The notes: generated from the letters alone by a model not told the origin. DNA of 63,680 nucleotides, filler included, from Dicyema japonicum (GCA_011109175.1; 7 parts of 7 records of this genome joined end to end with filler, not necessarily neighbours in it), one strand, 5' to 3'; shown: positions 1 through 25,982, counted from the first letter of the whole stretch. A program made the numbers and translations.

Positions 1-9
1 TGTCTGCGG

Positions 10-300
10 TTAGTGGTGGATGTTCTCAATAAGTAATGCGAAAGTTAGGTGGTTTAGGTCAAACGATTGTCTGAGATATTGTAAGCTCCTCATTTCAAGA
101 TGGGGATCTAAAGGCAGGGTTTTCGACTTCCAGTGTAGGTAACCAATGGGAGATGATTTTGAAGTGCCCGTTACCGCTCTCAGTGCTGAATTCTGGATCT
201 GCTGCATATTTTGTAGGAGGGAAAGTGACATATTATTGAGCCCAGTTTTAAGATGGATAATTCAGTGTCGTCTTGATGAATTGTTTGTACAGGAGCGGTA
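10..300 (-). mobile_element. 3' fragment of a non-LTR retrotransposon ORF (post-RT region)
   Basis: Translation LYKQFIK...LQNMQQIQNSALRAVTG..S.PIGYLH...K.LPL matches the conserved post-RT segment of APE-type LINEs. It is interrupted by stops. Confidence 0.6.
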
Positions 301-1253
301 GACTCTTTTTGTTGGTCGTTCGAGTGAACAGCTACTGCTCGAAGCATGTTTGATGTCCTCTTTGCTTTATGGGAATTGACTCACCTATGGTAATTTAAAA
401 ATTAGTGATATTATTATTTATTCATTATTTTTTTAAATAAATAACAGTGATATTCATAGTGCCCATTTGACATGGTTACAACATTCACATGATCGCAAAT
501 GTGCCGGAACACAGTCTGAACACCAGTAAAGGATGTAAAGGCTACTGAGGGAGGCCGCATCACCTGAATTTTCTCATTCTGGCTATGATGGTGGTTTTTG
601 GTTAATAAATTTAATTTAACACATGATGAAATACTGCTCACATACGTGCAGGCTACACACACGTTGTCTAATTAATAACTAATTCAGAGAATGACTAACA
701 CTACTCCCATCTCTTACCCAAGCAACATTTATGGTATACAGTCATCCACACAGGTTACTTTAACCCAGTAAACAACAGCGGTAACTTTTCTTTATTGCAT
801 GATTACACAAAAGCTCACATGTGATTTGACTGCAAAATCAAAACCACAAAATTAATTCATCAGAAAATATTCAAAATAAAAAAATCTAGTTTTTTATTAT
901 CATTTCTTTGTCATCAAAATAGTTGATTGGTTCAGGTAATCCAAAATAACAAGATGAGACTGTTTGCGTATCCAGTGGAAGATTTGCACTCAATTAGGTC
1001 CAGAATTCGACATTCTGGCAATAAAATTAACAACCCCCTGTTTCATTATTCAATGCCTCCCAAGAACGAAAGGTTCCACCGTGAAGACACAAGTGTACTC
1101 AAAACTAGACTACATTTTACCAGAGCAGCGTTAATCACTAAGCTAGCTGGCACTGTAAGGCTAAATTCATAGGTAATCCCTATAAACGACTACTAACAAA
1201 TCCTTTAAATCGAGGATTAGAAAGTTAGCAACCAAGAAAGAAACTGTTAGCAG

Positions 1254-2667
1254 TTAAATTAAGATGAGGATCAGCAGGCAAATAAAAGCCAGTGGATATG
1301 ATAGCTCAAATCTATGTTGGATGCCCTTGCTGTGACTCGTAGCATTATACTTTATGTGACAAAATATGCTACCTTCTTTAGCCCCAACCCTTCATGCACA
1401 GCAGCAATCAGGGGACTTTCCCCATTGTTGCACTCATTTCCAGAAAAATCGTCATAATCCAACGTCCAGACGAACATCCCAGCTAGTCCTTTACTTTCCA
1501 CGTAATTTGCCTTATTTTAGTTAACCTTATACCTTCTCCCGAATGCTCTGAGGGGTTTCATACCCAACCAATAATAGTCCTTAACTCCATGTGCGGCTTT
1601 TTGTGTGTCGTTCCATACATTCCGGTAGTCCTCGTTGCAGTACTAAAATAAACTCTGTTTGATACTTCAAAGTAAGCCAATTTCCCGCGAAGATGTAGAA
1701 TGCTTCCTGGGGCAGTCGTGTCGACCACGAGTCCCCTATTTGTGGATTCTTGGTGGTAGTTTTGTATCCGCGAGCATAAGTTGGAACTCCAATAACAATT
1801 TTGGACAGAGGAGCCCCGTTGGAGTTCCAATATTCGACAGAAGAGTCCTTAGATATTTTATGGTTGATACAGCACACAGTTGGTCATCACTGTTGAGGCA
1901 AAAGAGCCCGGAAGGATGGCGAACGACTTTCGAAGACTCGTTGTAGTAGTTATAAGTCTTAATGTTAATGTAGTCGAGGTATCTTCTATCACGGATAATA
2001 CGGCTACTTGGAGATATTCCGGATCTCATACAGCCTCGTAGAATTGTTTGCTGAAACAAACGCAGTCAGCAAATATGTCCCCGAACTGTCCCTTTTGAAT
2101 TCCTCACTCAGAGTCTCCGAGTTATTCCAATTTTACCTTTAAAAGAGCGTATAAATTGTCTTGTTTTCTCGGATACTCCCAGTTTATGTCCAATCCGTCG
2201 AAATTGTATTTCTTCAAATATTCCCTTGCGTTTGAGGCGAATAGTGCTCTGTTTGTCTCATTCTTTAATTTTCTGATAAGTTCGTCGTTCCCCCGAATCG
2301 AGAGCAGGACTTTTAGGTCAGAATTCTTATTCTTCAGTGAAGTGACCTTGTTGTAGTTGTCAAATCCAACTATCTTATAAATGTTTGCATACTCGCAAGG
2401 TCAGACTGGGGATTACTCGAGAGGAGGGTAAGGGTATCTGGTCTAATATTCGCGAAGGCGTATATTATGTGGGTGCAGAGATGGGGGTTCATATTATCGG
2501 CCACATACTTTTCCCGGGTCTGTAAATAGCCCAGTTTGTGTAGTAACAGAATAATGCATTGCCTAAATGAAAAATACTGTGAACTCTTCTCAGCCGTGGT
2601 GTTGGATAGTTGAATCTACAATTGTTTTACAAAATTACAGAAAATAAAATCAAATAAAAAATAGCAT
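1254..2667 (-). pseudogene. GH18 chitinase-like gene, copy 1 (several frameshifts)
   Basis: Same exon/micro-intron layout as copies 2 and 3, but with a 4-bp deletion near 2510, 1-bp deletions near 1563, 1728 and 2660, and a 6-bp deletion near 2048. Confidence 0.8.
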
Positions 2668-3782
2668 CTAAATAGCATAAAAAACAATTTTATTTCAAAA
2701 TTGGTTAACCAACATAGAAATTTACAGACAAAAATCACTAAAGACGCACTTGAAGCTCAAAATTAACTTATGAACCGGGAAAATGCTAAGAAAAATAACT
2801 TCTATAAGTTCTGAATGAAGAGAGTCCAAAATCAACGAGAATTGCCAAATAGATAGCAGGTTTATTACTTTATCAAACAAGTTGAGGTTTAGGACTGTCG
2901 GAGGTATGACCTTCTTGCAAGAGAGTTCTCTCTTTTCTACAACTGTAAGTAAAGACTAGTCTGCAGGTGGAGTCGTCTGATAATGCTCCAAGAATTATGT
3001 GATTGGTTATCCGTCGATAAGCTACAAGGGCTTACATCGGATCAGTCGTGTTGAAGAGAACTCTTGAAAGTATGGTGGCTGTGCACAATCACGGGATTGA
3101 GATCATTGATGAAGATTTCATTTGTGCTTCAAACCAACTTTTGGAGCAGGAATCTGCTAATTGTGAGGACATGACTGATTCTAATGTGGAAAAAAGGATA
3201 AGGATGACTTCATAAACTTTGAATTTTTTAGTCGTGAGAGCGAAGTAGAGTACTAGTGGCTTAGTGATTGTAGTTTGAAGTGGTCGATCTTATTTAGATT
3301 TGATTTAGACAGGTAAATTATAAATAAATATAGATCTTTTCCACAGAAAACCACAACTTACTGAAGGAAATAAATTTTAATAAATCAGAAAACCACAACT
3401 TACTGAAGGAAATAAATTTTAATCAGAATTACTGAATATTTTGTCAATAATTTCAAAATGTCAATATTTCGTCATAATAAAAAATTCAAATATCTAACAA
3501 ATAGTAAGCGGTTTAAAAAGTTTGTGCTATGTGGTTTATTAATTGAATTTTCATGCTAACGTGACGGAAGTGGTTTCTGTATGTTAATTTCATCATAGTT
3601 TATGATATTTTCAGATATTTTGATTAGACAGAGCATGTGGATTCATGTTATCGGCATCAGTCCTTGATTTCTTTTACATTCACTAATACTTATTCTGACC
3701 CATAGGCTGGCATCAAACTTGATTTAAAGAAGGAGTCGAAAGTAGTGGCTCACAAATAAAGGTTATTATATTGTGGCATCAG

Positions 3783-5850
3783 CTACCTGATAAATTCTCT
3801 GTACAGATAAGAGGCAATAGTCGTAAACTTGCTCCCAAGCAGGTGGAGAAGGTTAAAGGAAGAGTTCTCGATTACTTCACGTTCCACACAATTGCTGTCA
3901 TGACAACTGGAGTGATAATATGAGTCTCTGTCTTCATGAGTGGGACATCTGGCCACACTCAGAACCCGTAAAATCTGAGAACCAAGGAATACTTGCAATG
4001 GATCTCAATAGCCATTGCAAGAGGTGACACTGCGTCGGGGATAACTAATCAACACAACTTCCGATTACTTGATGATGGCAATTCCAAGGACCTGAGAGAA
4101 CCATTAAAGTAAACTGGGTCTAAGAGTCTCGTCGCTATTGCACTCCCAATTCATCGATAACTCCTTCAATTTTCTAACCGTTCCAGAGGTTTTGAAGGCG
4201 ATCGGGATGAAACGGTAGCGATCTCTGACAGCTGAGTGTTGATGCACGTCAGATTTTAGAATAGAGATCTCCCATGTGAAAATGGTAATTTCGTACGGTC
4301 TCTTCTTATCTCCGCTATCAAGTCTCTAGTTAAACGAGCAGTTCCTGCATATGAATTGAATACATACCTGAAGGTATCCGCATATGGAATGGTAAGGTTG
4401 CAAAGGCTAGATTAGTGGTTATGACCAAACTCCCAGTAGTAAATTCCGATATATTTGAATCAAGGAGTATTTCCAAATCTAATTATGCTCAAGAATTAAT
4501 GAAGTGAATAATTTAGTTTTGTTACAAGAAATAACTAAAGAATGTACTTAACGTTGATTCAGTAATCGGTCGGGAAAAGGCATACCAATATCCCATAGTA
4601 TTAACAAGACAGAAAAAGATCATTCCTTTTATTTTAGATGAAGTGGCCTCTAAGTTCAAGGGGTTAAAACAGTTTTAATGACTAGCAATAACTCCCAGGA
4701 ATATAGAGGATGCAATAGTATGGAAATAATGTATATAAGGAAGAAAGACTACAAATATTGTGAGGCATTAAGATAAAAATAGTACAGTAAACTGAATTAC
4801 AGTTGTAATTTGATGTCAATTCGTATGTCTGAACTGTGAGCGAAGAGCATACCTGAAGGTATTCACTATAACATTTGTTCATGGAGTTGTATTTCACAAA
4901 GAATTAAAAATTGATATGTTAATTATTGAATGTCGTAGATTATTCAAAATCAGTAAGGAATTAATTAAACTGAATAAATTAACAAACTCTTATTAACCAA
5001 ATCCTTATATCCTATAGTCAACTACCATTATCTGCCACAAATACCAAGCAGGTTGTTTGGGTCTGATATTTTACTACAAACTGAAATAATATTTATAATT
5101 ACGTAAACGACTGGCCGGTTGGTTGTCCATACTAATTATATTAATATCACACAAATACATTTCACCATTTCGGTTGATTTTAATCGTATTCCCTTCGATA
5201 GATTTATGTCTAAGCTATACATGACTTTATACGCTTTTGGTATGCCCATAGCATCAACACACAATATGTCGACACTAATTTAATATTAAAAATACTTATG
5301 TAATGCAACAGAATCAGAAATCGTCATAAATAATTGTACTGTTGATGAAATAGGAAAATCACTATAAATTAATAAAATAACTTACACAGCATAGAGCCTC
5401 TCCATTAAAATTGCAAAGTCTGTGCTAATATACATTAATTTGAAACATTCGGCGAGATATCTATCATTTTCAAAATATAATACAAATATTCACTACTGAG
5501 TGGTAGAGTAGTAGAAGTGATGACTTTAATGATATGATCAACCTTACACGCACTATAATGATTAATATTGTAATACAAAAATTTAGCATTTAGCATTTGA
5601 AGTGAAAAAATAGCTCCATCGGGTACACTAATGTTCTCAGCATAAACGAAATTTATTTGTTCTCTGTAGGTGAGATCTTCAAATACACAGTGCTCCAAAT
5701 ATCTGTGAATGATTTTGAATAATACAAATTGTTATCCGTGATAATTTTAGAGTTACACCCTTCCATCATTTTTGAGCAGTGAAAAACTGCTATGAAGATA
5801 ATGAGATTGTACATACAAAATCATATAAATTTAAGAGATCTGCGCATATA
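3783..5850 (-). CDS. Putative micro-intron gene or pseudogene: Cys-rich/LRR-like N-terminal part with hydrophobic C-terminal segments (copy 1)
   Basis: Consecutive 21-24-nt GT-AG introns give a continuous frame YLEHCVFEDL...TLPLSSEYLYLAECFKLMYISTDFAILMERLYAVDFP...DILCVDAMGIPKAY. The 3' half and both ends could not be resolved. Confidence 0.55.
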
Positions 5851-8360: not shown

Positions 8361-11300
8361 TCCCTTCAGTCATCGTTCGATGGGACTGACCGAGATGAGA
8401 TGGGAGAAGACCAGGGGAGTTGACAATCTTCATAATTACAAATTGACATTTTCTCGTATGGGATATCACTTGTGTTGATACGTTGCGACAAATACAACCT
8501 CAGACTGCCTGCTACTGAATCTGCCGAACAGAGGAAGCTGGATGAATATTCTACGCTTAGGAAAGGTTTCTGTATTGTCTCTATCATGCCTGGGTGTGAC
8601 CTTTACTATCAGCTGAGTTCTATGAACGGTCACCCATTCCAAAATGGAACGAAAAGAGCCAACAGCTTCTCCCCACCGTCTGGTGGTCCTTTCATCCCCT
8701 GTGTCTTCGACCCTGTCTGGTGTCCCCATTTATCCAGACTTTTGATTCTTCTATGTGGGGACGTCGAAACCAATCCTGGTCCATGGAGAGGTTTTACAAT
8801 TATACAACTGAATACGAATGGGATCAGGAAGAAAATCTTTGAACTCCGGGCACTCCTCCGCGAAAATGAGGCTGACCTCGCTTTAATACAGGAGTCCAAG
8901 CTATCTCCCTCCATACCAACACCCTCTTTTCCCGGATACACAGTGATCCGTAAAGATCGTCAGGGAGGACGCGGAGGAGGACTACTTACTATTATAAAGA
9001 ACGATATTCTTTTTATGGATACAACCCAACGAACCTCGGAGCTTCTTGGCTCCGACAAGACTTTGGAGCAGATTACTGTCAAAATCGAGTTATTCCCATC
9101 CTTTTGGATCCATTTGGCTAATATATATATTCCTCCACAAGGATCGTGTCCGTCATCTTACACCCCTGATTTATCACGCATTTCAACGTTGAAAAATCTA
9201 CTGTTATGTGGGGATCTTAATGCACGACATCCCGTTTGGCTCACTTCCCAATCCTCTGATAACCGAGGAGAACTCATTGCAAATTATCTTCCTGACCTGA
9301 TTATACTGAACAACCCTAACTCACATACGAGGACCCCATTAAGGATAACTGATAGCTGCACATCCCCCGACTTAACATTATGCTCACCTTCTCTGGCTGG
9401 ACTCATTTCCTGGAACGTCTTTTACGGCTTCCCCAGTGACCACAATCCAATCCTTCTAAAATTGAGAGGTCTTCGACGATACAGGAGACGGTCGGCGGAA
9501 TCAAAAAGATTCAAGGATTATACGAAGGTTGACTGGTCTGGTTTCAGTAACCTTGTGGATAAATTCTTGGCCGGGAGATTATCCTTCCCAATACGCTCTA
9601 TTGACGAGGCCGCAGAAATTATCAGCGCTGCCATTCAGAAAGCTGACCATATTTTTATTCCTATATCGTCATACAAGAAGTTTATTCCTACCCTCAGCTC
9701 TTATACAATAAGTCTTATAAAACAAAGAGACCGGCTGAAGAGATGCCATCTGTTGGACATGAAGTCTTTGACAGCCCTCAGACAACTGAATAAAAGAATC
9801 TGTCAGAGCATAAAAGAACACAAGGACAAGAGATGGCAGCATCTAGTTAACCACCTCGACAGGAAAAGTACATCCCGACACTTCTGGAAAACTTTTAAAC
9901 AAGTCAAGTCGGAGCTGGACGATGCAGACGGAACCGGAAAGTCTTCTCCTGAACACTTATGCCACCTACATCCTAACATCCTTATGAAACATTACGCTGG
10001 AATTAGCTTCAAACCATTCTCGAAACACCTGGACATTAAGGTGCGTGCCCATAAACCGAAGAAGGAACCTTATCACGAACTATTCACAGATGACCAAGTC
10101 TTGGATGTGATCACCAGATTAAAGAGCTCACGGGCGTGCGGGCCTGACAAAGTATCTTCTATTCACCTAAAACACCTAAGCCACTACGCAATTGGCTACC
10201 TCACGCATATATACAATCTGTCCATTAACTATAATATTATTCCTAAGATTTGGAAGAATTCTATCATCAGACCGATATTGAAGGCTGGGAAACCAGAGAC
10301 AGAACCTGCATCCTACAGGCCTATTTCCGTTACCAGCACACTGTCAAAAATTATGGAGAAACTTGTATTATCGTCATTATTCCGTATCTTCCGCGTCCTA
10401 TATTTCAACATGGTTTCCTCCGCGGTAGGTCCACCGCTACATACTTGGCAACTTTATCCAGTTCATTGCCGACGGTTTTAACACCCATCCTCCGCCTCAC
10501 AAACGCACAATCTTGGTTTCTATTGACATCAACAAAGCCTTTGACACTGTTTCGAGGAAAATCTTGGTTGGAAAAATTTTTTCTACTAATATTCGTCCGA
10601 ATGTGAAATTATGGCTGGCCAACTTTTTGTCTGGAAGACGTGGAAGAGTAGTCAGTGGTGATCTCAGATCTAGATCACGATTACTACCGAACGGGGTACC
10701 CCAGGGGTCTCCACTTTCACCAATTCTATTCAACCTTTTCCTACACGACCTACCTAATGATGGAGACGAAGATTCCCTGTTATTATCCTACGCAGACGAC
10801 GTAGTCATTGCAATACGGAACCGCTCGACGCAAGTCGCATCCCTTAAAACTCAGACAAAATTGAACATTCTCCACGATTGGATTGCTGGCAATCGACTAA
10901 CGATTTCTGCAACCAAATCTATCTGTTCCACATTCACGTCGGACCGTCGTTCCAAGGATGAACCGAGTCTTTTCATTGGTCCCACTAGGATTCCAGTGAC
11001 AAAGTCCCCCATTGTCCTTGGAGTCAAGTACGACAGCCTTCTCAAATTCAACTCCCACGCAACAGACATGATCACCAGGGGCCTCCAGAAAGTTAACGTT
11101 ATACGCGCCCTTGTTCGGAGGACCACGAGGAACATGGACTTTTCCGTTTCTACACTCTACCAACAAACAATCGCGCCTGCCATTGAGTATGCCTCCGTTG
11201 CATGGAGATTCGGGCTATCGGAGTCTTTGGTCCAAAGAATCAACTCGATATACCGGAAAACAATCAGTATGCTTTCCCCACGTAATGGATCAACAGTCGA

Positions 11301-11609
11301 CCCACTACTCATGGAAGCTAAGATCCGTAGTCGTGGCTCCGGATTTCTTCGCCTCTGTGAGGAAGATGGAAATCCGCTTCGCCTAATCCTTCCCATGGCA
11401 AGAGAAAACCGATTGGATAAGAAATTCCCCTCCCCGATCGGATTCCTCTGCAAGACCGAGAGAAGGCTCTTCCGGAAAGTAGTGGGGACGATGGAGGATC
11501 ACAGACGTCGAATGGCACAAGTGATTGCGAGGACTGGGATCATCTAACTGTCTGACTCTTTGTCTTTATTTCTCGGTGTTCCCGGGGATATTAAAATAAA
11601 TAAAAAAAA
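8361..11609 (+). mobile_element. LINE family B copy 1: single ORF 2A-APE-RT, no RNase H seen (Ingi/Vingi-like architecture); two 1-bp deletions near 10373 and 10459
   Basis: ORFs 8472-10481 and 10513-11547 carry LLILLCGDVETNPGP, QLNTNG, IQESKL, GDLNARH, SDHNPI, YRPIS, DINKAFD, GVPQGS and YADD. A-rich tail at 11591-11609. The 5' boundary is approximate (8321-8361). Confidence 0.93.
8760..8783 (+). other. 2A-like ribosomal skipping (StopGo) motif DVETNPG/P
   Basis: Exact match to D-[V/I]-E-x-N-P-G-P, preceded by the hydrophobic run LSRLLILLCG and followed directly by the APE domain. Confidence 0.9.
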
Positions 11610-12408: not shown

Positions 12409-13834
12409 TTAAATTAAGATGAGGATCAGCAGGCAAATAAAAGCCAGTGGATATGATAGCTCAAATCTATGTTGGATGCCCTTGCTGTGACTCGTAGCAT
12501 TATACTTTATGTGACAAAATATTCTACCTTCTTTAGCCCCAACCCTTCATGCACAGCAGCAATCAGGGGACTTTCCCCATTGTTGCACTCATTTCCAGAA
12601 AAATCGTCATAATCCAACGTCCAGACGAACATCCCAGCTAGTCCTTTACTTTCCACGTAATTTGCCTTATTTTAGTTAACCTTATACCTTCTCCCGAATG
12701 CTCTGAGGGGTTTCATACCCCAACCAATAATAGTCCTTAACTCCATGTGCGGCTTTTTGTGTGTCGTTCCATACATTCCGGTAGTCCTCGTTGCAGTACT
12801 AAAATAAACTCTGTTTGATACTTCAAAGTAAGCCAATTTCCCGCGAAGATGTAGAATGCTTCCTGGGGCAGTCGTGTCGACCACCGAGTCCCCTATTTGT
12901 GGATTCTTGGTGGTAGTTTTGTATCCGCGAGCATAAGTTGGAACTCCAATAACAATTTTGGACAGAGGAGCCCCGTTGGAGTTCCAATATTCGACAGAAG
13001 AGTCCTTAGATATTTTATGGTTAATACAGCACACAGTTGGTCATCACTGTTGAGGCAAAAGAGCCCGGAAGGATGGCGAACGACTTTCGAAGACTCGTTG
13101 TAGTAGTCATAAGTCTTAATGTTAATGTAGTCGAGGTATCTTCTATCACGGATAATACGGCTACTTGGAGATATTCCGGATCTCATACAGTTTCGTAGAA
13201 TTGTTTCTATTTGCTGAAACAAACGCAGTTAGCAAATATGTCCCCGAACTGTCCCTTTTGAATTCCTCACTCAGAGTCTCCGAGTTATTCCAATTTTACC
13301 TTTAAAAAGAGCGTATAAATTGTCTTGTTTCTCGGATACTCCCAGTTTATGTCCAATCCGTCGAAATTGTATTTCTTCAAATATTCCCTTGCGTTTGAGG
13401 CGAATAGTGCTCTGTTTGTCTCATTCTTTAATTTTCTGATAAGTTGGTCGTTCCCCCGAATCGAGAGCAGGACTTTTAGGTCAGAATTCTTATTCTTCAG
13501 TGAAGTGACCTTGTTGTAGTTGTCGAATCCAACTATCTTATAAATGTTTGCATACTCGCAAGGTCAGACTGGGGATTACTCGAGAGGAGGGTAAGGGTAT
13601 CTGGTCTAATATTCGCGAAGGCGTATATTATGTGGGTGCAGAGATGGGGGTTCATATTATCGGCCACATACTTTGCGTTCCCGGTCTGTAAATAGCCCAG
13701 TTTGTGTAGTAACAGAATAATGCATTGCCTAAATGAAAAATACTGTGAACTCTTCTCAGCCGTGGTGTTGGATAGTTGAATCTACTATTGTTTTACAAAA
13801 TTACAGAAAATAAAATCAAATAAAAAAATAGCAT
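12409..13834 (-). CDS. GH18 chitinase-like protein, copy 2; 10 exons, signal peptide and GPI-like tail (one 1-bp deletion at about 13683, possibly a sequencing error)
   Basis: Motifs FCYYTNW, HLCTHIIYAFA, FDGLDINWEYP, LDYINIKTYDY, KIVIGVPTYARG, WLGYETPQSIREKANYV and GLAGMFVWTLDYDDF join in frame once nine GT-AG introns of 22-23 nt are removed. Confidence 0.85.
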
Positions 13835-14883
13835 CTAAAATAGCATAAAAAACAATTTTATTTCAAAATTGGTTAACCAACATAGAAATTTACAGACAAA
13901 AATCACTAAAGACGCACTTGAAGCTCAAAATTAACTTATGAGCCGGGAAAATGCTAAGAAAAATAACTTCTATAAGTTCTGAATGAAGAGAGTCCAAAAT
14001 CAACGAGAATTATAGTCCAAAACCAAATAGATAGCAGGTTTATTACTTTATCAAACAAGTTGAGGTTTAGGACTATCGGAGGTATGACCTTCTTGCAAGA
14101 GAGTTCTCTCTTTTCTACGACTGTAAGTAAAGATTAGTCTGCAGGTGGAGTCGTCTGATAATGCTCCAAGAATTATGTGGATTGGTTATCCGTCGATAAG
14201 CTACAAGCTTACATCGGATCAGTCGTGTTGAAGAGAACTCTTGAAAGTATGGTGGCTGTGCACAAGCACGGGATTGAGATCATTGATGAAGATTTCATTT
14301 GTGCTTCAAACCAACTTTTGGAGCAGGAATCTGCTAATTGTGAGGACATGAATGATTCTAATGCGGAAAAAATGACTTCATAAACTTTGAATTGTTTTTG
14401 TCATGAGAGCGAAGTAGAGTACTACTGTAGTGGCTTAGTGATTGTAGTTTGAAGTGGTCGATCTTATTTAGATTTGATTTAGACAGGTAAATTATAAATT
14501 ATTTAATAAATCACAAAACCACAACTTACTGAAGGAAATAAATTTTCAAATATATTAATGTCAAATATTTCGTCATAATAAAAAATTCAAATATCTAACA
14601 AATAGTAAGCGGTTTAAAAAGTTTGTGCTATGTGGTTTATTAATTGAATTTTCATGCTAACGTGACGGAAGTGGTTTCTGTATGTTAATTTCATCATAGT
14701 TTATGATATTTTCAGATATTTTGATTAGACAGAGCATGTGGATTCATGTTATCGGCATCAGTCCTTGATTTCTTTTACATTCACTAATACTTATTCTGAC
14801 CCATAGGCTGGCATCAAACTTGATTTAAAGAAGGAGTCGAAAGTAGTGGCTCACAAATAAAGGTTATTATATTGTGGCATCAG

Positions 14884-16950: not shown

Positions 16951-17082
16951 AACCTGTAAATTAATTCAAATTTATTTTAAAATAAATTAATTCAAATTTA
17001 TAAATTAATTCAAATTTATTTTAAATTTAACTAAAATCTCTTCCTTATTTAACTTAACCATATGTTTTCTTATAGTTTCGAT

Positions 17083-19411
17083 GTTTGTTGTAGCGTGGTG
17101 TTATGTGGTCCACCAATTCAAAAAAATCAAAAGGATCAAGATTGGCTATCCACGAGTAGATCATCATATGTGGCGATTTAAACGCAAAGCACCCATTATG
17201 GTTGTCAACCCAACAGCCCGACACGAGAGGGAATCTATTGTTATTGAAATCGGACTCCCTGACGATACTGAACGATCCAGCAAAAAATACAAGGACCCCA
17301 CTCAGAGAGACGGATCTACCTCACCGGATGTAACATTCTGCTCATCGTCGCTTTCATCAATAATTGATTGGTCAGTCCTCTACGAAACAAGAAGCGACCA
17401 TAATCCAATTGTGATGAAGGTCATGAGAGAAGTCAGAGTGAGGAGAACACCTGCTAGTTATAACTACAAAGCTGCTAATTGGGAATTGTATCGCGCAATC
17501 TCTGATGATAGGCTGAAGAATTGTTACTTGGACAGCTTCAAATCGCTAGAAAAAGGGATCAAATACTTTACTTTCACAATCCTAGAAGCAAGATCATTGG
17601 CTATTCCCGAGCATCGTCTAAATTCCTTTAATGGTCGAGGAAGTCGGCATTGATCAAAGAAAGAAATCACCTCAAAAAAATCTTATTGGATTACATTAGA
17701 AACGAAACTCCGGGTCAGAGCCCTAAACAACGAAATAAAGACCAGAGTTCAAGGCCCATAAATTGAAGTGTAATCGGATTCTTACAAAGGTACCGTAGTA
17801 CCGGAGAAGTGTGGAAAGCCATCCGAAATGTTGCAAAGGACGAAGAAATTTCCCCCGAGGATGACTATACTCAACGAGACGTTAACAATTTGATAAAATT
17901 CTACACAAAAATTTCGTACAAAAAACACAGAAAGTCGGAAGTGCTTCTCTCTTCACGGAGAAAACTGAAGAAGGATTCTGATTCAGTTTACTTCTCGAAT
18001 GAAGACGTGAAGAATGCGCTGCGTTTTACAAGAACAACGTACTCTGCTGGTCCCGACAACATTCCAGTAGTGTTATTGAAGAACCTTGGAGATATGGGAG
18101 TCGGTTTTCTAACGTCGATTTTCAACTATTCAGTTAATTGTAATCTAATACCCCGTTGTTATGGAAGCAAGCCAACATCCGACCTATACTGAAACCTGGA
18201 AAACCTAAAGAAGATCCGGCATCATTTAGATTTGTGTCATTGTTATGTTCCGTATCGAAAATCCTTGAGAGGCTTGTGCTTGGGAGAATCAAGGCCTTTT
18301 AACAGAAAAGGATTTTCAACACGGATTCAAGAGCGATGGTCCTACATCAACGTACCTACAGAAATTAACCAATTTTATTAGAGATGGATTTTCAAACAAA
18401 CCAAGGCATTTGAAAACAGTCTTATGTTCCATTGACAAGGCCTTTGATTCTATTTCGAGAAAAATATTATCAAAGAAAATTTTCCAGTCGGAGATCCCGG
18501 GGAAGCTTAAACTTTGGAAAACAAATTTCTTAAGTGAACGGAGGGGGACGTGTATGCCTCGGGGGACTGAAATCAGTCTCGCGTCTTCTCCCAAACGGTG
18601 TACCCCAAGGATCTCTTTTATCCCCCGCCGTATTCAATTTATACCTGGCCGACCTCCCGACACCGGAATCTAATAACGATGTTCTACTCTCATATGCGGA
18701 CGACATTGTTTTGGCCTCGCGTGATCGGGATATCCAAAATGCTACAGAAAGATTACAAATTAACCTGGACCGACTCAACGCCTGGGTAATGAAGAACCGA
18801 CTCACGATAAATTCCAGAAAGTCGGTCACGTCTATGTTTACTTCGGACAAAAGGTTGGGGAAGATGACTGTCAAGTTAAAATTGGACAACGTTGAAATCC
18901 TCTTCAGCAAATGTCAGAAGATCCTGGGCGTGACACTGGATACTCACTTATGTTTGTCACCACACGTGACAAACATTGTTCTGAAGTGCGAGAAGAGGAT
19001 CAATGAATTAAAATGTTTATCTGGAATTTGGAAGACAGGTACCCACCCGGTCTTGATGAACATTTACAAACAATACATCGAACCATGCTTCTCGTACGCG
19101 TGTGCTTCATGGAGACCTTCATTATCATGGACGAACACTAAGAAAATTTAGGACATTCAAAAGAAGGCTTTCAGAATGACGGAGCGGTGGTCTTGTGGGA
19201 GACACAGAACCGGACCGACTACTCTGGAGGCTCTCATTAAACAAAACTCCGGCATGCGGGAAGGTGACCCTGCAAATACAGTCAGCCGCCCAGTACGAGC
19301 TTGTGTGGGTACGAGGGAGGAGCATCGGGAAAGAATGAGGATTTTGGTGGAACGCATCGGGATCACGTGATAGTTAGTTTTGGTTTTACCTTGGTCTTGG
19401 GTGTTAAATAA
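17083..19411 (+). mobile_element. LINE family A copy 2, TSD ATAGTTTCGAT (17072-17082 / 19412-19422)
   Basis: RT-region ORFs identical to copy 1. Confidence 0.92.
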
Positions 19412-19462: not shown

Positions 19463-22400
19463 TCCCTTCAGTCATCGTTCGATGGGACTGACCGATGAGA
19501 TGGGAGAAGACCAGGGGAGTTGACAATCTTCATAATTACAAATTGACATTTTCTCGTATGGGATATCACTTGTGTTGATACGTTGCGACAAATACAACCT
19601 CAGACTGCCTGCTACTGAATCTGCCGAACAGAGGAAGCTGGATGAATATTCTACGCTTAGGAAAGGTTTCTGTATTGTCTCTATCATGCCTGGGTGTGAC
19701 CTTTACTATCAGCTGAGTTCTATGAACGGTCACCCATTCCAAAATGGAACGAAAAGAGCCAACAGCTTCTCCCCACCGTCTGGTGGTCCTTTCATCCCCT
19801 GTGTCTTCGACCCTGTCTGGTGTCTCCATTTATCCAGACTTTTGATTCTTCTATGTGGGGACGTCGAAACCAATACTGGTCCATGGAAAGGTTTTACAAT
19901 TATACAACTGAATACGAATGGGATCAGGAAGAAAATCTTTGAACTCCGGGCACTCCTCCGCGAAAATGAGGCTGACCTCGCTTTAATACAGGAGTCCAAG
20001 CTATCTCCCTCCATACCAACACCCTCTTTTCCCAGATACACAGTGATCCGTAAAGATCGTCAGGGAGGACGCGGAGGAGGACTACTTACTATTATAAAGA
20101 ACGATATTCTTTTTATGGATACAACCCAACGAACCTCGGAGCTTCTTGGCTCCGACAAGACTTTGGAGCAGATTACTGTCAAAATCGAGTTATTCCCATC
20201 CTTTTGGATCCATTTGGCTAATATATATATTCCTCCACAAGGATCGTGTCCGTCATCTTACACCCCTGATTTATCACGCATTTCAACATTGAAAAATCTA
20301 CTGTTATGTGGGGATCTTAATGCACGACATCCCGTTTGGCTCACTTCCCAATCCTCTGATAACCGAGGAGAACTCATTGCAAATTATCTTCCTGACCTGA
20401 TTATACTGAACAACCCTAACTCACATACGAGGACCCCATTAAGGATAACTGATAGCTGCACATCCCCCGAATTAACATTATGCTCACCTTCTCTGGCTGG
20501 ACTCATTTCCTGGAACGTCTTTTACGGCTTCCCCAGTGACCACAATCCAATCCTTCTAAAATTGAGAGGTCTTCGACGATACAGGAGATGGTCGGCGGAA
20601 TCAAAAAGATTCAAGGATTATACGAAGGTTGACTGGTCTGGTTTCAGTAACCTTGTGGATAAATTCTTGGCCGGGAGATTATCCTTCCCAATACGCTCTA
20701 TCGACGAGGCCGCAGAAATTATCAGCGCTGCCATTCAGAAAGCTGACCATATTTTTATTCCTATATCGTCATACAAGAAGTTTATTCCTACCCTCAGCTC
20801 TTATACAATAAGTCTTATAAAACAAAGAGACCGGCTGAAGAGATGCCATCTGTTGGACATGAAGTCTTTGACAGCCCTCAGACAACTGAATAAAAGAATC
20901 TGTCAGAGCATAAAAGAACACAAGGACAAGAGATGGCAGCATCTAGTTAACCACCTCGACAGGAAAAGTACATCCCGACACTTCTGGAAAACTTTTAAAC
21001 AAGTCAAGTCGGAGCTGGACGATGCAGACGGAACCGGAAAGTCTTCTCCTGAACACTTATGCCACCTACATCCTAACATCCTTATGAAACATTACGCTGG
21101 AATTAGCTTCAAACCATTCTCGAAACACCTGGACATTAAGGTGCGTGCCCATAAACCGAAGAAGGAACCTTATCACGAACTATTCACAGATGACCAAGTC
21201 TTGGATGTGATCACCAGATTAAAGAGCTCACGGGCGTGCGGGCCTGACAAAGTATCTTCTATTCACCTAAAACACCTAAGCCACTACGCAATTGGCTACC
21301 TCACGCATATATACAATCTGTCCATTAACTATAATATTATTCCTAAGATTTGGAAGAATTCTATCATCAGACCGATATTGAAGGCTGGGAAACCAGAGAC
21401 AGAACCTGCATCCTACAGGCCTATTTCCGTTACCAGCACACTGTCAAAAATTATGGAGAAACTTGTATTATCGGTCATTATTCCGTATCTTCCGCGTCCT
21501 ATATTTCAACATGGTTTCCTCCGCGGTAGGTCCACCGCTACATACTTGGCAACTTTATCCCAGTTCATTGCCGACGGTTTTAACACCCATCCTCCGCCTC
21601 ACAAACGCACAATCTTGGTTTCTATTGACATCAACAAAGCCTTTGACACTGTTTCGAGGAAAATCTTGGTTGGAAAAATTTTTTCTACTAATATTCGTCC
21701 GAATGTGAAATTATGGCTGGCCAACTTTTTGTCTGGAAGACGTGGAAGAGTAGTCAGTGGTGATCTCAGATCTAGATCACGATTACTACCGAACGGGGTA
21801 CCCCAGGGGTCTCCACTTTCACCAATTCTATTCAACCTTTTCCTACACGACCTACCTAATGATGGAGACGAAGATTCCCTGTTATTATCCTACGCAGACG
21901 ACGTAGTCATTGCAATACGGAACCGCTCGACGCAAGTCGCATCCCTTAAAACTCAGACAAAATTGAACATTCTCCACGATTGGATTGCTGGCAATCGACT
22001 AACGATTTCTGCAACCAAATCTATCTGTTCCACATTCACGTCGGACCGTCGTTCCAAGGATGAACCGAGTCTTTTCATTGGTCCCACTAGGATTCCAGTG
22101 ACAAAGTCCCCCATTGTCCTTGGAGTCAAGTACGACAGCCTTCTCAAATTCAACTCCCACGCAACAGACATGATCACCAGGGGCCTCCAGAAAGTTAACG
22201 TTATACGCGCCCTTGTTCGGAGGACCACGAGGAACATGGACTTTTCCGTTTCTACACTCTACCAACAAACAATCGCGCCTGCCATTGAGTATGCCTCCGT
22301 TGCATGGAGATTCGGGCTATCGGAGTCTTTGGTCCAAAGAATCAACTCGATATACCGGAAAACAATCAGTATGCTTTCCCCACGTAATGGATCAACAGTC

Positions 22401-22710
22401 GACCCACTACTCATGGAAGCTAAGATCCGTAGTCGTGGCTCCGGATTTCTTCGCCTCTGTGAGGAAGATGGAAATCCGCTTCGCCTAATCCTTCCCATGG
22501 CAAGAGAAAACCGATTGGATAAGAAATTCCCCTCCCCGATCGGATTCCTCTGCAAGACCGAGAGAAGGCTCTTCCGGAAAGTAGTGGGGACGATGGAGGA
22601 TCACAGACGTCGAATGGCACAAGTGATTGCGAGGACTGGGATCATCTAACTGTCTGACTCTTTGTCTTTATTTCTCGGTGTTCCCGGGGATATTAAAATA
22701 AATAAAAAAA
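19463..22710 (+). mobile_element. LINE family B copy 2
   Basis: Near-identical to 8361-11609, with an A-rich tail ending at 22710. Confidence 0.93.
19572..22649 (+). CDS. Intact 1025-aa APE endonuclease-reverse transcriptase ORF of LINE B; 2A motif mutated to DVETNTGP
   Basis: Uninterrupted ORF with all EN and RT motifs. First in-frame ATG at 19686. C>A at 19875 changes the 2A proline to threonine. Confidence 0.93.
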   Translation: MLIRCDKYNLRLPATESAEQRKLDEYSTLRKGFCIVSIMPGCDLYYQLSSMNGHPFQNGTKRANSFSPPSGGPFIPCVFDPVWCLHLSRLLILLCGDVETNTGPWKGFTIIQLNTNGIRKKIFELRALLRENEADLALIQESKLSPSIPTPSFPRYTVIRKDRQGGRGGGLLTIIKNDILFMDTTQRTSELLGSDKTLEQITVKIELFPSFWIHLANIYIPPQGSCPSSYTPDLSRISTLKNLLLCGDLNARHPVWLTSQSSDNRGELIANYLPDLIILNNPNSHTRTPLRITDSCTSPELTLCSPSLAGLISWNVFYGFPSDHNPILLKLRGLRRYRRWSAESKRFKDYTKVDWSGFSNLVDKFLAGRLSFPIRSIDEAAEIISAAIQKADHIFIPISSYKKFIPTLSSYTISLIKQRDRLKRCHLLDMKSLTALRQLNKRICQSIKEHKDKRWQHLVNHLDRKSTSRHFWKTFKQVKSELDDADGTGKSSPEHLCHLHPNILMKHYAGISFKPFSKHLDIKVRAHKPKKEPYHELFTDDQVLDVITRLKSSRACGPDKVSSIHLKHLSHYAIGYLTHIYNLSINYNIIPKIWKNSIIRPILKAGKPETEPASYRPISVTSTLSKIMEKLVLSVIIPYLPRPIFQHGFLRGRSTATYLATLSQFIADGFNTHPPPHKRTILVSIDINKAFDTVSRKILVGKIFSTNIRPNVKLWLANFLSGRRGRVVSGDLRSRSRLLPNGVPQGSPLSPILFNLFLHDLPNDGDEDSLLLSYADDVVIAIRNRSTQVASLKTQTKLNILHDWIAGNRLTISATKSICSTFTSDRRSKDEPSLFIGPTRIPVTKSPIVLGVKYDSLLKFNSHATDMITRGLQKVNVIRALVRRTTRNMDFSVSTLYQQTIAPAIEYASVAWRFGLSESLVQRINSIYRKTISMLSPRNGSTVDPLLMEAKIRSRGSGFLRLCEEDGNPLRLILPMARENRLDKKFPSPIGFLCKTERRLFRKVVGTMEDHRRRMAQVIARTGII

Positions 22711-23509: not shown

Positions 23510-24933
23510 TTAAATTAAGATGAGGATCAGCAGGCAAATAAAAGCCAGTGGATATGATAGCTCAAATCTATGTTGGATGCCCTTGCTGTGACTCGTAGCA
23601 TTATACTTTATGTGACAAAATATTCTACCTTCTTTAGCCCCAACCCTTCATGCACAGCAGCAATCAGGGGACTTTCCCCATTGTTGCACTCATTTCCAGA
23701 AAAATCGTCATAATCCAACGTCCAGACGAACATCCCAGCTAGTCCTTTACTTTCCACGTAATTTGCCTTATTTTTTAACCTTATACCTTCTCCCGAATGC
23801 TCTGGGGGTTTCATACCCCAACCAATAATAGTCCTTAACTCCATGTGCGGCTTTTTGTGTGTCGTTCCATACATTCCGGTAGTCCTCGTTGCAGTACTAA
23901 AATAAACTCTGTTTGATACTTCAAAGTAAGCCAATTTCCCGCGAAGATGTAGAATGCTTCCTGGGGCAGTCGTGTCGACCACCGAGTCCCCTATTTGTGG
24001 ATTCTTGGTGGTAGTTTTGTATCCGCGAGCATAAGTTGGAACTCCAATAACAATTTTGGACAGAGGAGCCCCGTTGGAGTTCCAATATTCGACAGAAGAG
24101 TCCTTAGATATTTTATGGTTAATACAGCACACAGTTGGTCATCACTGTTGAGGCAAAAGAGCCCGGAAGGATGGCGAACGACTTTCGAAGACTCGTTGTA
24201 GTAGTTATAAGTCTTAATGTTAATGTAGTCGAGGTATCTTCTATCACGGATAATACGGCTACTTGGAGATATTCCGGATCTCATACAGTTTCGTAGAATT
24301 GTTTCTATTTGCTGAAACAAACGCAGTTAGCAAATATGTCCCCGAACTGTCCCTTTTGAATTCCTCACTCAGAGTCTCCGAGTTATTCCAATTTTACCTT
24401 TAAAAAGAGCGTATAAATTGTCTTGTTTCTCGGATACTCCCAGTTTATGTCCAATCCGTCGAAATTGTATTTCTTCAAATATTCCCTTGCGTTTGAGGCG
24501 AATAGTGCTCTGTTTGTCTCATTCTTTAATTTTCTGATAAGTTGGTCGTTCCCCCGAATTGAGAGCAGGACTTTTAGGTCAGAATTCTTATTCTTCAGTG
24601 AAGTGACCTTGTTGTAGTTGTCGAATCCAACTATCTTATAAATGTTTGCATACTCGCAAGGTCAGACTGGGGATTACTCGAGAGGAGGGTAAGGGTATCT
24701 GGTCTAATATTCGCGAAGGCGTATATTATGTGGGTGCAGAGATGGGGGTTCATATTATCGGCCACATACTTTGCGTTCCCGGGTCTGTAAATAGCCCAGT
24801 TTGTGTAGTAACAGAATAATGCATTGCCTAAATGAAAAATACTGTGAACTCTTCTCAGCCGTGGTGTTGGATAGTTGAATCTACTATTGTTTTACAAAAT
24901 TACAGAAAATAAAATCAAATAAAAAAATAGCAT
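23510..24933 (-). CDS. GH18 chitinase-like protein, copy 3 (one 1-bp exonic deletion at about 23805)
   Basis: Introns at 24881-24903, 24828-24849, 24631-24653, 24376-24397, 24241-24262, 24103-24125, 23897-23919, 23767-23786 (20 nt here, 22 nt in copies 1 and 2) and 23606-23628. ATG at 24933, TAA at 23510. Confidence 0.85.
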
Positions 24934-25982
24934 CTAAAATAGCATAAAAAACAATTTTATTTCAAAATTGGTTAACCAACATAGAAATTTACAGACAAAA
25001 ATCACTAAAGACGCACTTGAAGCTCAAAATTAACTTATGAGCCGGGAAAATGCTAAGAAAAATAACTTCTATAAGTTCTGAATGAAGAGAGTCCAAAATC
25101 AACGAGAATTATAGTCCAAAACCAAATAGATAGCAGGTTTATTACTTTATCAAACAAGTTGAGGTTTAGGACTATCGGAGGTATGACCTTCTTGCAAGAG
25201 AGTTCTCTCTTTTCTACGACTGTAAGTAAAGATTAGTCTGCAGGTGGAGTCGTCTGATAATGCTCCAAGAATTATGTGGATTGGTTATCCGTCGATAAGC
25301 TACAAGCTTACATCGGATCAGTCGTGTTGAAGAGAACTCTTGAAAGTATGGTGGCTGTGCACAAGCACGGGATTGAGATCATTGATGAAGATTTCATTTG
25401 TGCTTCAAACCAACTTTTGGAGCAGGAATCTGCTAATTGTGAGGACATGAATGATTCTAATGCGGAAAAAATGACTTCATAAACTTTGAATTGTTTTTGT
25501 CATGAGAGCGAAGTAGAGTACTACTGTAGTGGCTTAGTGATTGTAGTTTGAAGTGGTCGATCTTATTTAGATTTGATTTAGACAGGTAAATTATAAATTA
25601 TTTAATAAATCACAAAACCACAACTTACTGAAGGAAATAAATTTTCAAATATATTAATGTCAAATATTTCGTCATAATAAAAAATTCAAATATCTAACAA
25701 ATAGTAAGCGGTTTAAAAAGTTTGTGCTATGTGGTTTATTAATTGAATTTTCATGCTAACGTGACGGAAGTGGTTTCTGTATGTTAATTTCATCATAGTT
25801 TATGATATTTTCAGATATTTTGATTAGACAGAGCATGTGGATTCATGTTATCGGCATCAGTCCTTGATTTCTTTTACATTCACTAATACTTATTCTGACC
25901 CATAGGCTGGCATCAAACTTGATTTAAAGAAGGAGTCGAAAGTAGTGGCTCACAAATAAAGGTTATTATATTGTGGCATCAG

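What the first reader, a model, noticed from the sequence alone, without database searches (positions are those of the whole stretch)
23510..24933. Hidden, essentially intact GH18 gene with nine 22-23-nt introns, a signal peptide and a GPI-anchor-like tail
Seen: the ORF track shows only fragments, but removing nine GT-AG micro-introns (consensus lengths 23,22,23,22,22,23,23,22,23; 203 nt of a 1427-nt consensus) leaves 1224 nt, or 407 aa plus stop. Every GH18 motif is then in frame. The first intron completes a signal peptide (MLFFYLILFSIQLSNT..). The last intron uncovers a C-terminal exon YNATSHSKGIQHRFELSYPLAFICLLILILI*, with small residues, a spacer and a hydrophobic end. At least 8 N-x-S/T sequons are present. 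Inference: a heavily glycosylated, surface-tethered GH18 protein present in three tandem copies, which gene finders with normal minimum intron sizes would miss.
Basis: partly seen in the sequence, partly recalled or inferred. Interest (0 to 1): 0.82.

Follow-up and report, generated by a model that had tools for sequence, protein, structure and literature searches.

The report
Known dicyemid chitinase-like gene, tiny introns
The split gene is real, but it is the chitinase-like protein 1 gene of the octopus-kidney parasite Dicyema japonicum, already in GenBank and UniProt, and its 22-25-base introns are a known trait of these animals.

Summary
On the minus strand, 24933..23510, ten exons separated by nine GT-AG introns of 20-25 nt encode a GH18 protein. 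It has an N-terminal hydrophobic leader, nine N-x-S/T sequons and a 13-residue hydrophobic C-terminus. The gene sits in an 11.1-kb unit, together with a LINE, that is repeated three times in the window.

It is not hidden. An exon-4 search returned a 406-aa public protein, 'chitinase like protein1 [Dicyema japonicum]' (BAF81106.1/BAF81107.1, UniProt A8CF43). It is 99% identical over exon 4 and contiguous across all nine proposed junctions. The assembly size (67,542,437 b, 377 contigs) matches the published D. japonicum genome. Introns of about 26 nt have been described for dicyemids since 2007.

Corrections:
- Intron 5 is 25 nt, not 22, so the protein is 406 aa.
- This copy as assembled lacks one base in exon 8 and two bases in intron 8. 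Short-read contigs do not support either deletion.
- A fourth copy on scaffold C24 is fully intact.
- The catalytic motif is imperfect (DGLDINWE).

The signal peptide and GPI anchor remain predictions. A GPI-transamidase homologue is present in the genome. No RNA run was available.

Verdict: real, already known, low interest.

The parts
23510..24933 (-). clp1 gene, copy 3 (ATG to TAA): ten exons and nine introns. As assembled it has one frameshift in exon 8.
24904..24933 (-). Exon 1, 10 codons, the start of the hydrophobic leader. It is followed by intron 1 (24903-24881, 23 nt, GTA..TAG).
   Evidence: paralogues share this intron
24850..24880 (-). Exon 2. It is followed by intron 2 (24849-24828, 22 nt, GTT..TAG, phase 1).
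24654..24827 (-). Exon 3 (GH18 profile 2-46). It is followed by intron 3 (24653-24631, 23 nt).
24398..24630 (-). Exon 4 (GH18 profile 50-131). It holds SIRGN and the imperfect catalytic motif DGLDINWE. It is followed by intron 4 (24397-24376, 22 nt, GTA..GAG).
24263..24375 (-). Exon 5. It is followed by intron 5 (24262-24238), which is 25 nt according to the public protein.
24126..24237 (-). Exon 6 (GH18 profile 172-200; KTY(N/D)YYN). It is followed by intron 6 (24125-24103, 23 nt).
23920..24102 (-). Exon 7 (GH18 profile 206-240). It is followed by intron 7 (23919-23897, 23 nt).
23787..23896 (-). Exon 8. One base is missing at 23803/23804 relative to copies 1, 2 and C24 and to all short-read contigs. 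It is followed by intron 8 (23786-23767), which is 20 nt here and 22 nt elsewhere.
23629..23766 (-). Exon 9 (end of the GH18 domain; FVWTLDYDDF). It is followed by intron 9 (23628-23606, 23 nt).
23510..23605 (-). Exon 10: a 31-codon tail with one sequon, small residues (S-H-S-K-G), a polar spacer and a 13-residue hydrophobic end, then TAA.
24954..24978 (-). Upstream motif TGGTTAACCA..AAATAAAAT, 21-45 nt before the ATG. It is shared with three diverged GH18 paralogues.
12409..13834 (-). clp1 copy 2, with a 1-nt deletion in exon 3 as assembled.
1254..2667 (-). clp1 copy 1. It has several 1-nt indels, a 4-nt deletion and an in-frame 6-nt deletion as assembled.
19572..22649 (+). LINE ORF (apurinic-type endonuclease plus reverse transcriptase, 1025 aa) that forms the rest of the 11.1-kb repeat unit.

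Best explanation
This is the chitinase-like protein 1 (clp1) gene of the dicyemid Dicyema japonicum, present as three tandem copies in an 11.1-kb unit that also carries a LINE.

The primary transcript is processed by the ordinary spliceosome, which in dicyemids works on introns of about 20-30 nt. Removing nine such introns gives a 406-aa GH18 protein.

The protein keeps the GH18 domain, both conserved disulfide pairs, the catalytic Glu and the -1/-3 subsite aromatics. It has lost the middle Asp of DxxDxDxE (D to N), the GGW(N) loop and the C-terminal chitin-binding domain that its paralogues carry.

I infer that it is a secreted, N-glycosylated protein that binds chitin or GlcNAc oligosaccharides, with little or no hydrolytic activity. 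It is probably held on the cell surface by a GPI anchor added at the small-residue cluster before the hydrophobic tail.

Shown here: gene structure, identity with the public protein, family membership, motif changes, copy structure. Inferred: splicing in vivo (from the public protein and the conserved intron positions), secretion, glycosylation, GPI anchoring, lack of activity.
For: - Identity: exon 4 finds P0003, 406 aa, 99% identical at aa 80-156. It is named 'chitinase like protein1 [Dicyema japonicum]', BAF81106.1/BAF81107.1, A8CF43.
- Gene structure: aligning P0003 to the DNA gives nine introns of 23, 22, 23, 22, 25, 23, 23, 22 and 23 nt. Only A176V, a 2-aa deletion and S225N differ on the C24 copy. 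On this copy four substitutions differ, plus the frameshift patch.
- Organism: the assembly has 67,542,437 b in 377 contigs, matching the published D. japonicum assembly of 67.5 Mb in 377 scaffolds (PMC6736024).
- Intron conservation: positions and phases are conserved in paralogues with unrelated intron sequences.
- Family: GH18 Pfam E 1.5e-75 over aa 24-349. The best solved relatives are human chitotriosidase, E 1e-62, and AMCase, then chitinase-3-like proteins from about 1e-60.
- Motif changes are seen in these alignments.
- Paralogues have the canonical motifs plus an S/T linker and a Cys-rich chitin-binding-like domain, which I identified by eye and did not scan.
- Only two hydrophobic segments exist, at the two ends of the protein. 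There are nine sequons.
- A GPI-transamidase homologue is present.
- Short-read contigs restore the exon-8 frame. The intact C24 copy gives 405 aa with no stops.
Against:
- I could not confirm from the tools that BAF81106 is cDNA-derived. My recollection of a 2007 cloning paper by Ogino, Tsuneki and Furuya is unverified, and the paper is not in the held library.
- Each of the three window copies is frameshifted as assembled.
- Six-frame searches found no PIG-T, PIG-A or PIG-M domain, though these searches are insensitive here.
- The catalytic Glu is retained, so residual activity cannot be excluded.
Confidence: 0.93

Rival explanations
1. The three copies in this window are decaying pseudogenes of a LINE-associated segmental duplication. 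The functional clp1 gene lies elsewhere, for example the intact copy on scaffold C24.
For: As assembled, copy 3 has a 1-nt exon-8 deletion, copy 2 a 1-nt exon-3 deletion and copy 1 at least six frameshifting indels. Degenerate clp1-like relics exist at other loci. The genome is 49% repeats (PMC6736024).
Against: Nearly all the indels are homopolymer-length differences, as expected of PacBio-derived consensus. The assembly merged Falcon and Platanus contigs. None of the frameshifting indels appears in the short-read contigs. Those contigs do show the real variants, namely the 6-nt in-frame deletion and the substitutions. Even the copy-3-specific substitution at 24560 is absent from all four runs. 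Contigs can drop rare variants, so this is not proof.
Confidence: 0.15
2. The protein is an active enzyme rather than a lectin: a weak chitinase or a transglycosylase that rebuilds chito-oligosaccharides.
For: The catalytic Glu, the first Asp, the Tyr of the (M)xYD motif, the Tyr and Arg of the YxR motif and the Trp of the FVW motif are retained. The same D-to-N change engineered in Serratia ChiB (D142N) and ChiA (D313N) lowers Km and raises transglycosylation (PMC5505975).
Against: In addition to D to N, the GGW(N) loop is deleted or replaced (SIRGN). The Met of the MxYD motif is Lys. Copies 1 and 3 also have Asn for the Asp of that motif. The depositors named it chitinase-like.
Confidence: 0.2
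3. The hydrophobic C-terminus is not a GPI signal. The protein is either a membrane protein with a short C-terminal anchor or a soluble secreted protein.
For: No GPI predictor could be run. PIG-T, PIG-A and PIG-M domains were not detected. The Gaa1 hit is below the cut-off. The spacer of 9-14 residues is at the long end of the range usual for GPI signals.
Against: The 13-residue hydrophobic end has no following charged residues, which is too short for a stable membrane helix and typical of GPI signals. Small residues (S-H-S-K-G) lie 9-11 residues upstream. A PIGK/GPI8 homologue that matches only GPI transamidases in the PDB is present.
Confidence: 0.3

Closest known systems
Dicyema japonicum chitinase-like protein 1 (GenBank BAF81106.1/BAF81107.1; UniProt A8CF43_DICJA)
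   Same: It is the same gene product. It has 406 aa, is contiguous over all nine junctions, and has the same leader and the same hydrophobic tail.
   Different: The window copies differ by a few residues: E108Q, A176V, R185K and D205N in copy 3. As assembled they also carry indels. The record does not describe the 11.1-kb tandem array, the LINE or the C24 copy, as far as the tools show.
Human chitotriosidase (CHIT1) and acidic mammalian chitinase, GH18
   Same: They are the best solved relatives, with E 1e-62 over aa 24-376. The domain, disulfides, catalytic Glu, and the Tyr and Arg of the YxR motif are the same.
   Different: The middle Asp of DxxDxDxE is Asn. The GGWNFG loop is replaced by a shorter RGND. 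The Met of the MxYD motif is Lys. There is no C-terminal chitin-binding domain, and a hydrophobic tail takes its place.
Chi-lectins: mammalian CHI3L1/YKL-40, CHI3L2, Ym1; insect imaginal disc growth factors
   Same: They are GH18-fold proteins with an imperfect catalytic motif and no chitin-binding domain (one search lists them at E 1e-53 to 1e-61; IDGF-2 is weaker, E 6e-34, and matches only part).
   Different: From my own knowledge, those proteins usually lose the catalytic Glu. Here the Glu is kept and the neighbouring Asp is changed. The loss of activity arose independently within the dicyemid GH18 expansion.
Serratia marcescens ChiB-D142N / ChiA-D313N mutants
   Same: They carry the same D-to-N change next to the catalytic Glu.
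   Different: They are engineered bacterial enzymes with all other subsites intact. They show a lower Km and more transglycosylation (PMC5505975).
Canonical GH18 paralogues of D. japonicum (e.g. G000:C1:2197195, C90:381848, C90:643297, C321:126108)
   Same: They are 47-63% identical. They share the same intron positions and phases, and some share the upstream TGGTTAACCA motif.
   Different: They have DxDWE, S(V/I)GGW, MTYDFYG, an S/T-rich linker and a Cys-rich chitin-binding-like domain (recognised by eye) instead of the short hydrophobic tail.

Membership tests
Glycoside hydrolase family 18 (Pfam PF00704) | Full-length match to the GH18 profile above the curated cut-off | tested here: met
   The exon pieces match in order. 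The public product P0003 scores 255 bits, E 1.5e-75, over profile 2-317.
Catalytically competent GH18 chitinase | Intact DxxDxDxE motif | tested here: not met
   The motif is D-G-L-D-I-N-W-E, so the Asp next to the catalytic Glu is Asn.
Catalytically competent GH18 chitinase | SxGGW loop and MxYD motif | tested here: not met
   The loop is SIRGN, with a 4-residue gap against chitotriosidase. The second motif is KTYD in P0003 and KTYN in copies 1 and 3.
Canonical animal chitinase architecture | C-terminal chitin-binding (peritrophin-A type) domain after an S/T linker | tested here: not met
   The tail is 31 residues with no Cys pattern. Paralogues do carry the linker and the Cys-rich domain, which I recognised by eye and did not scan against Pfam.
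Chitinase-like protein (chi-lectin) | GH18 fold with a defective catalytic motif | tested here: met
   the depositors' name is 'chitinase like protein1'
Chitinase-like protein (chi-lectin) | No chitinase activity, with sugar binding retained | not testable with these tools
   This needs recombinant protein assays.
Dicyemid spliceosomal mini-introns | GT-AG boundaries, length about 20-30 nt, positions conserved among homologues | tested here: met
   There are nine GT..AG introns of 22-25 nt. Positions and phases are conserved in paralogues. Literature gives 26.2 +/- 1.9 nt (PMC2222250) and a median of 27 nt (PMC6543705).
Dicyemid spliceosomal mini-introns | Removal seen in RNA | tested here: inconclusive
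   No RNA run was served. The public 406-aa protein is contiguous over all junctions, but the tools could not show whether it derives from cDNA.
GPI-anchored protein | N-terminal signal peptide | tested here: inconclusive
   The leader at aa 1-14 is hydrophobic and T-T-A precedes aa 19. This is a heuristic only; SignalP was not available.
GPI-anchored protein | C-terminal signal: small omega residues, polar spacer, hydrophobic end with nothing after it | tested here: inconclusive
   S-H-S-K-G, then 9-11 polar residues, then 13 hydrophobic residues up to the stop. This is a heuristic only.
GPI-anchored protein | The host genome encodes the GPI transamidase | tested here: met
   A Peptidase_C13 hit lies at G000:C337. 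One of its exons matches only GPI-anchor transamidases in the PDB, E 3.4e-07. Other subunits were not found.

The most novel reading that the evidence does not exclude
clp1 is the surface-anchored, non-hydrolytic (or transglycosylating) member of an undescribed expansion of at least 24 GH18 loci in a parasite with about 5,000 genes. It has been amplified as a LINE-linked 11-kb tandem array and is co-regulated with the canonical chitinases through a shared TGGTTAACCA promoter element. The family would then be a main interface between the dicyemid and the chitin-producing cephalopod host.
Probability: 0.25. Interest if true: 0.4.

Novelty: already known. Interest (0 to 1): 0.12.

Why it matters
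It matters little as a discovery. The gene product is already in GenBank and UniProt, and dicyemid mini-introns are well documented.

The practical value is narrower:
1. It shows that reading tiny introns by eye can recover a correct gene model. Eight of the nine introns were exact and the ninth was off by 3 nt at its acceptor.
2. It flags assembly indels in scaffold C12 of the public D. japonicum genome. These would break gene models in repeated regions.
3. It points to a large GH18 family that is absent from the published list of gene clusters with six or more copies.
4. It points to a possible GPI-anchored chitinase-like protein that could be tested as a parasite surface molecule.

Tried and rejected
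- Rfam and tRNA scans of the window found nothing.
- The word-indexed protein search with exon 4 returned only a 69-aa fragment at 44% identity. Its length filter excludes the 406-aa product.
- The look-up of sequencing runs gave four DNA runs of one study and no RNA run, so splicing could not be seen in reads.
- The single-sequence AlphaFold model of P0003 was poor (pLDDT 34.6) and was not used.
- PIG-T, PIG-A and PIG-M Pfam searches of the genome gave no hits. I treat this as uninformative, because genes here are split by introns and evolve fast.
- Full-text searches for dicyemid or Dicyema with chitinase, for the accession numbers and for the protein name gave no papers. A guessed DOI for the 2007 cloning paper is not held.
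- Six further genomic sites of the upstream motif are not followed by GH18 genes, so the motif is not family-specific.
- An alternative intron at 23872 (22 nt) and the 20-nt reading of intron 8 were rejected. They destroy the alignment to paralogues and to P0003.
It was never typed or sent to a database tool. Database searches were made exon by exon by reference, and then with the public protein P0003.

Full report
**What is in the sequence**

The gene lies on the minus strand. The ATG is at 24933-24931 and the TAA at 23512-23510. The mechanical ORF list shows only fragments.

A path search that allows GT..AG excisions of 20-26 nt restores one frame from this ATG to this stop. The candidate introns are short A/T-rich segments. 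Eight begin with GTA and one with GTT, and all end in AG.

Translated exon by exon by reference, the pieces hit Pfam GH18 in order: profile 2-46, 50-131, 172-200, 206-240 and 298-317. The window holds three copies of an 11.1-kb unit at 96.5-99% identity. The gene copies are at 1254-2667, 12409-13834 and 23510-24933.

**Are the introns real?**

Six-frame searching of the window's own assembly finds GH18 matches at about two dozen loci. A protein-to-genome alignment of my own, with introns of 15-45 nt allowed, was run against 15 of them. It recovers the same positions and phases again and again: aa 79 phase 1, 156 phase 0, 192/193 phase 2, 230 phase 0, 291 phase 0 and 328 phase 0. Four of these six positions recur even in a paralogue that is 25% identical. 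The intron lengths (20-37 nt) and sequences differ.

In paralogues whose intron happens to be 24 or 27 nt, tblastn reads straight through. It then shows an 8- or 9-codon insert at exactly the proposed junction; those of the paralogue on C1 all carry stop codons. Introns 1 and 2 in the leader, and intron 9 after the GH18 domain, recur in paralogues too.

**Whose gene is it?**

The assembly has 67,542,437 bases in 377 contigs. The published Dicyema japonicum assembly is 67.5 Mb in 377 scaffolds. It was merged from Illumina (Platanus) and PacBio RS II (Falcon) contigs (PMC6736024).

The exhaustive protein search with exon 4 returned P0003, 406 aa, 99% identical at its residues 80-156. This is exactly where the model puts exon 4. 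The cluster look-up names it 'chitinase like protein1 [Dicyema japonicum]', BAF81106.1/BAF81107.1, UniProt A8CF43.

Aligning P0003 back to the DNA gives nine introns of 23, 22, 23, 22, 25, 23, 23, 22 and 23 nt. On the copy on scaffold C24 only three differences remain: A176V, a 2-residue deletion and S225N. On the copy of this finding, four substitutions remain plus a frameshift patch.

The acceptor is a TAG|AAG pair, and the public protein uses the AAG. The product is 406 aa, not 407.

From memory, which I could not check because the paper is not held, this record belongs to a 2007 cDNA-cloning paper by Ogino, Tsuneki and Furuya. Two consecutive accessions with one protein sequence fit a cDNA plus a genomic entry.

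Mini-introns in dicyemids are documented:
- 26.2 +/- 1.9 nt (PMC2222250).
- A median of 27 nt, with reference to a 40-gene survey (PMC6543705).
- A mean of 38 bp in the genome annotation.
- The 2026 survey of the shortest animal introns (PMC13644364).

**Is this copy intact?**

As assembled, it is not.
- Copy 3 lacks one base in exon 8 (23803/23804) and two bases in intron 8.
- Copy 2 lacks one base in exon 3.
- Copy 1 has several indels.

Almost all of these are homopolymer-length differences. I laid the contigs of four DNA runs of one study on the region; Nextera adapter remnants show they are Illumina libraries. Every contig over the exon-8 site has the extra base and the extra two intron bases, and no contig shows any of the other frameshifting indels. 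The contigs do show the true variants, namely the in-frame 6-nt deletion and neighbouring substitutions of the copy-1/C24 type.

I therefore read the frameshifts as consensus errors of the long-read part of the assembly. Contigs can hide rare variants, so this is likely rather than proven.

The fourth copy, G000:C24:877346-878822, gives 1218 nt, 405 aa and no stops once the introns are removed. It is collinear with copy 1, including the unique left flank, at 97.7%. It may therefore be the other haplotype.

**What the protein is**

P0003 matches GH18 over aa 24-349 with E 1.5e-75. It matches human chitotriosidase and acidic mammalian chitinase at about 1e-62, followed by chitinase-3-like proteins from about 1e-60.

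Retained in those alignments:
- Both Cys pairs.
- The aromatic residues of the YxTNW motif.
- The catalytic Glu.
- The Tyr and Arg of the YxR motif.
- The Trp of the FVW motif.

Changed:
- DGLDINWE replaces DGxDxDWE.
- SIRGN, four residues shorter, replaces S/AIGGWNFG.
- KTYD (KTYN in copies 1 and 3) replaces MxYD.

The other dicyemid paralogues keep the canonical motifs. They end in an S/T-rich linker and a Cys-rich domain that I take, by eye, for a chitin-binding domain. clp1 is therefore a derived member that lost these features and gained a short tail.

The same D-to-N change made in Serratia ChiB and ChiA lowers Km and raises transglycosylation (PMC5505975). Weak or altered activity therefore cannot be excluded.

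**Leader, sugars, tail**

Only two hydrophobic segments exist, aa 1-14 and the last 13-14 residues. There are nine N-x-S/T sequons, against 5.1 +/- 2.0 in shuffles.

The tail reads as follows: a sequon, S-H-S-K-G, 9-11 polar residues, 13 hydrophobic residues, then the stop. This fits the usual layout of a GPI signal and is too short for a stable membrane helix. No predictor was available.

The genome has a Peptidase_C13 gene, and one of its exons matches only GPI-anchor transamidases among solved structures. A Gaa1 hit is below the cut-off, and PIG-T, PIG-A and PIG-M were not detected. These six-frame searches are weak on intron-split, fast-evolving genes.

**Surroundings**

The rest of the unit is a LINE. 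One copy has an intact 1025-aa ORF with endonuclease and reverse-transcriptase domains, at 19572-22649 on the plus strand. Another copy is broken. No RNA genes were found.

**Verdict**

The finding is already known: the D. japonicum clp1 gene, with the mini-introns typical of the phylum.

Not evident from the public protein record are:
- The tandem array with a LINE.
- The likely assembly indels.
- The size of the GH18 family.
- The shared upstream motif.
- The GPI-like reading of the tail.

These are modest additions.

**Joined step**

The spliced model was handled only inside local scripts. It was never sent to a search tool. Searches were made exon by exon by reference and then with the public protein.

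Noticed in passing
window 19572-22649 (+); also 10513-11547 (+) and 17081-19151 (+): Each 11.1-kb unit carries a non-LTR retrotransposon. One copy has an intact 1025-aa ORF with endonuclease and reverse-transcriptase domains. The upstream unit has only a 344-aa RT fragment, and a second partial RT lies at 18534-19151.
   Followed up: partly
window 24954-24978, 13855-13879, 2687-2711 (-): The motif TGGTTAACCA(N4-8)AATAAAAT lies 21-45 nt upstream of the ATG. The genome has 16 sites, against 0 for the reversed control. Seven sites lie just upstream of GH18 genes: the four clp1 copies and the paralogues at C90:383059, C90:643124 and C321:125958. Six other sites that I tested are not followed by GH18 genes.
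   Followed up: partly
G000, about 24 loci plus six more found by DNA similarity: This is a large GH18 family for a genome of about 5,000 genes. Most members modelled have canonical DxDWE, GGW and MTYDFYG motifs, and several of them an S/T linker plus a Cys-rich chitin-binding-like domain. The family is absent from the published table of gene clusters with six or more copies (Table S3 of PMC6736024).
   Followed up: partly
G000:C24:875846-880322 (L017): This is a fourth, fully intact clp1 copy. It is collinear with window 1-4200, including the non-repeated left flank, at 97.7%. It is probably a retained haplotig or a segmental duplication, and only one gene copy is present on C24.
   Followed up: partly
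window 23774, 23803, 24560 and the copy-specific indels listed: The copy-specific single-base indels, and one copy-3-specific substitution, are absent from all short-read contigs. This part of scaffold C12 seems to carry unpolished long-read errors that break reading frames.
   Followed up: partly
L025 (C312:2011520-2013482), L026 (C354:91505-91838), L027 (C235:239798-241381), L028, L029: These are fragmentary clp1-like relics. They carry parts of the GH18 domain, the intron-9 site and a related tail (YN(N/T)(A/T)SHSQDTQHRY .. AFILFLI), interrupted by stops and inserts. They look like pseudogenes of the same subfamily.
   Followed up: partly
L014 (G000:C337:230024-233398), minus strand, local 1500-2200: This is a PIGK/GPI8-like gene split by mini-introns. 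One exon (local 1875-2051) matches only GPI-anchor transamidases in the PDB.
   Followed up: partly
window 24238-24262 (-): Intron 5 ends in tandem acceptors TAG|AAG, 3 nt apart. The public protein uses the distal one. Use of the proximal one would add one Arg. Whether both are used is unknown.
   Followed up: no
P0041 (309 aa): This public protein is 51% identical to exon 4 and also has DINWE. It appears to read through an in-frame mini-intron (..ISKLNIHIFTIRYLDY..). It may be an unspliced gene call from a dicyemid contig.
   Followed up: no
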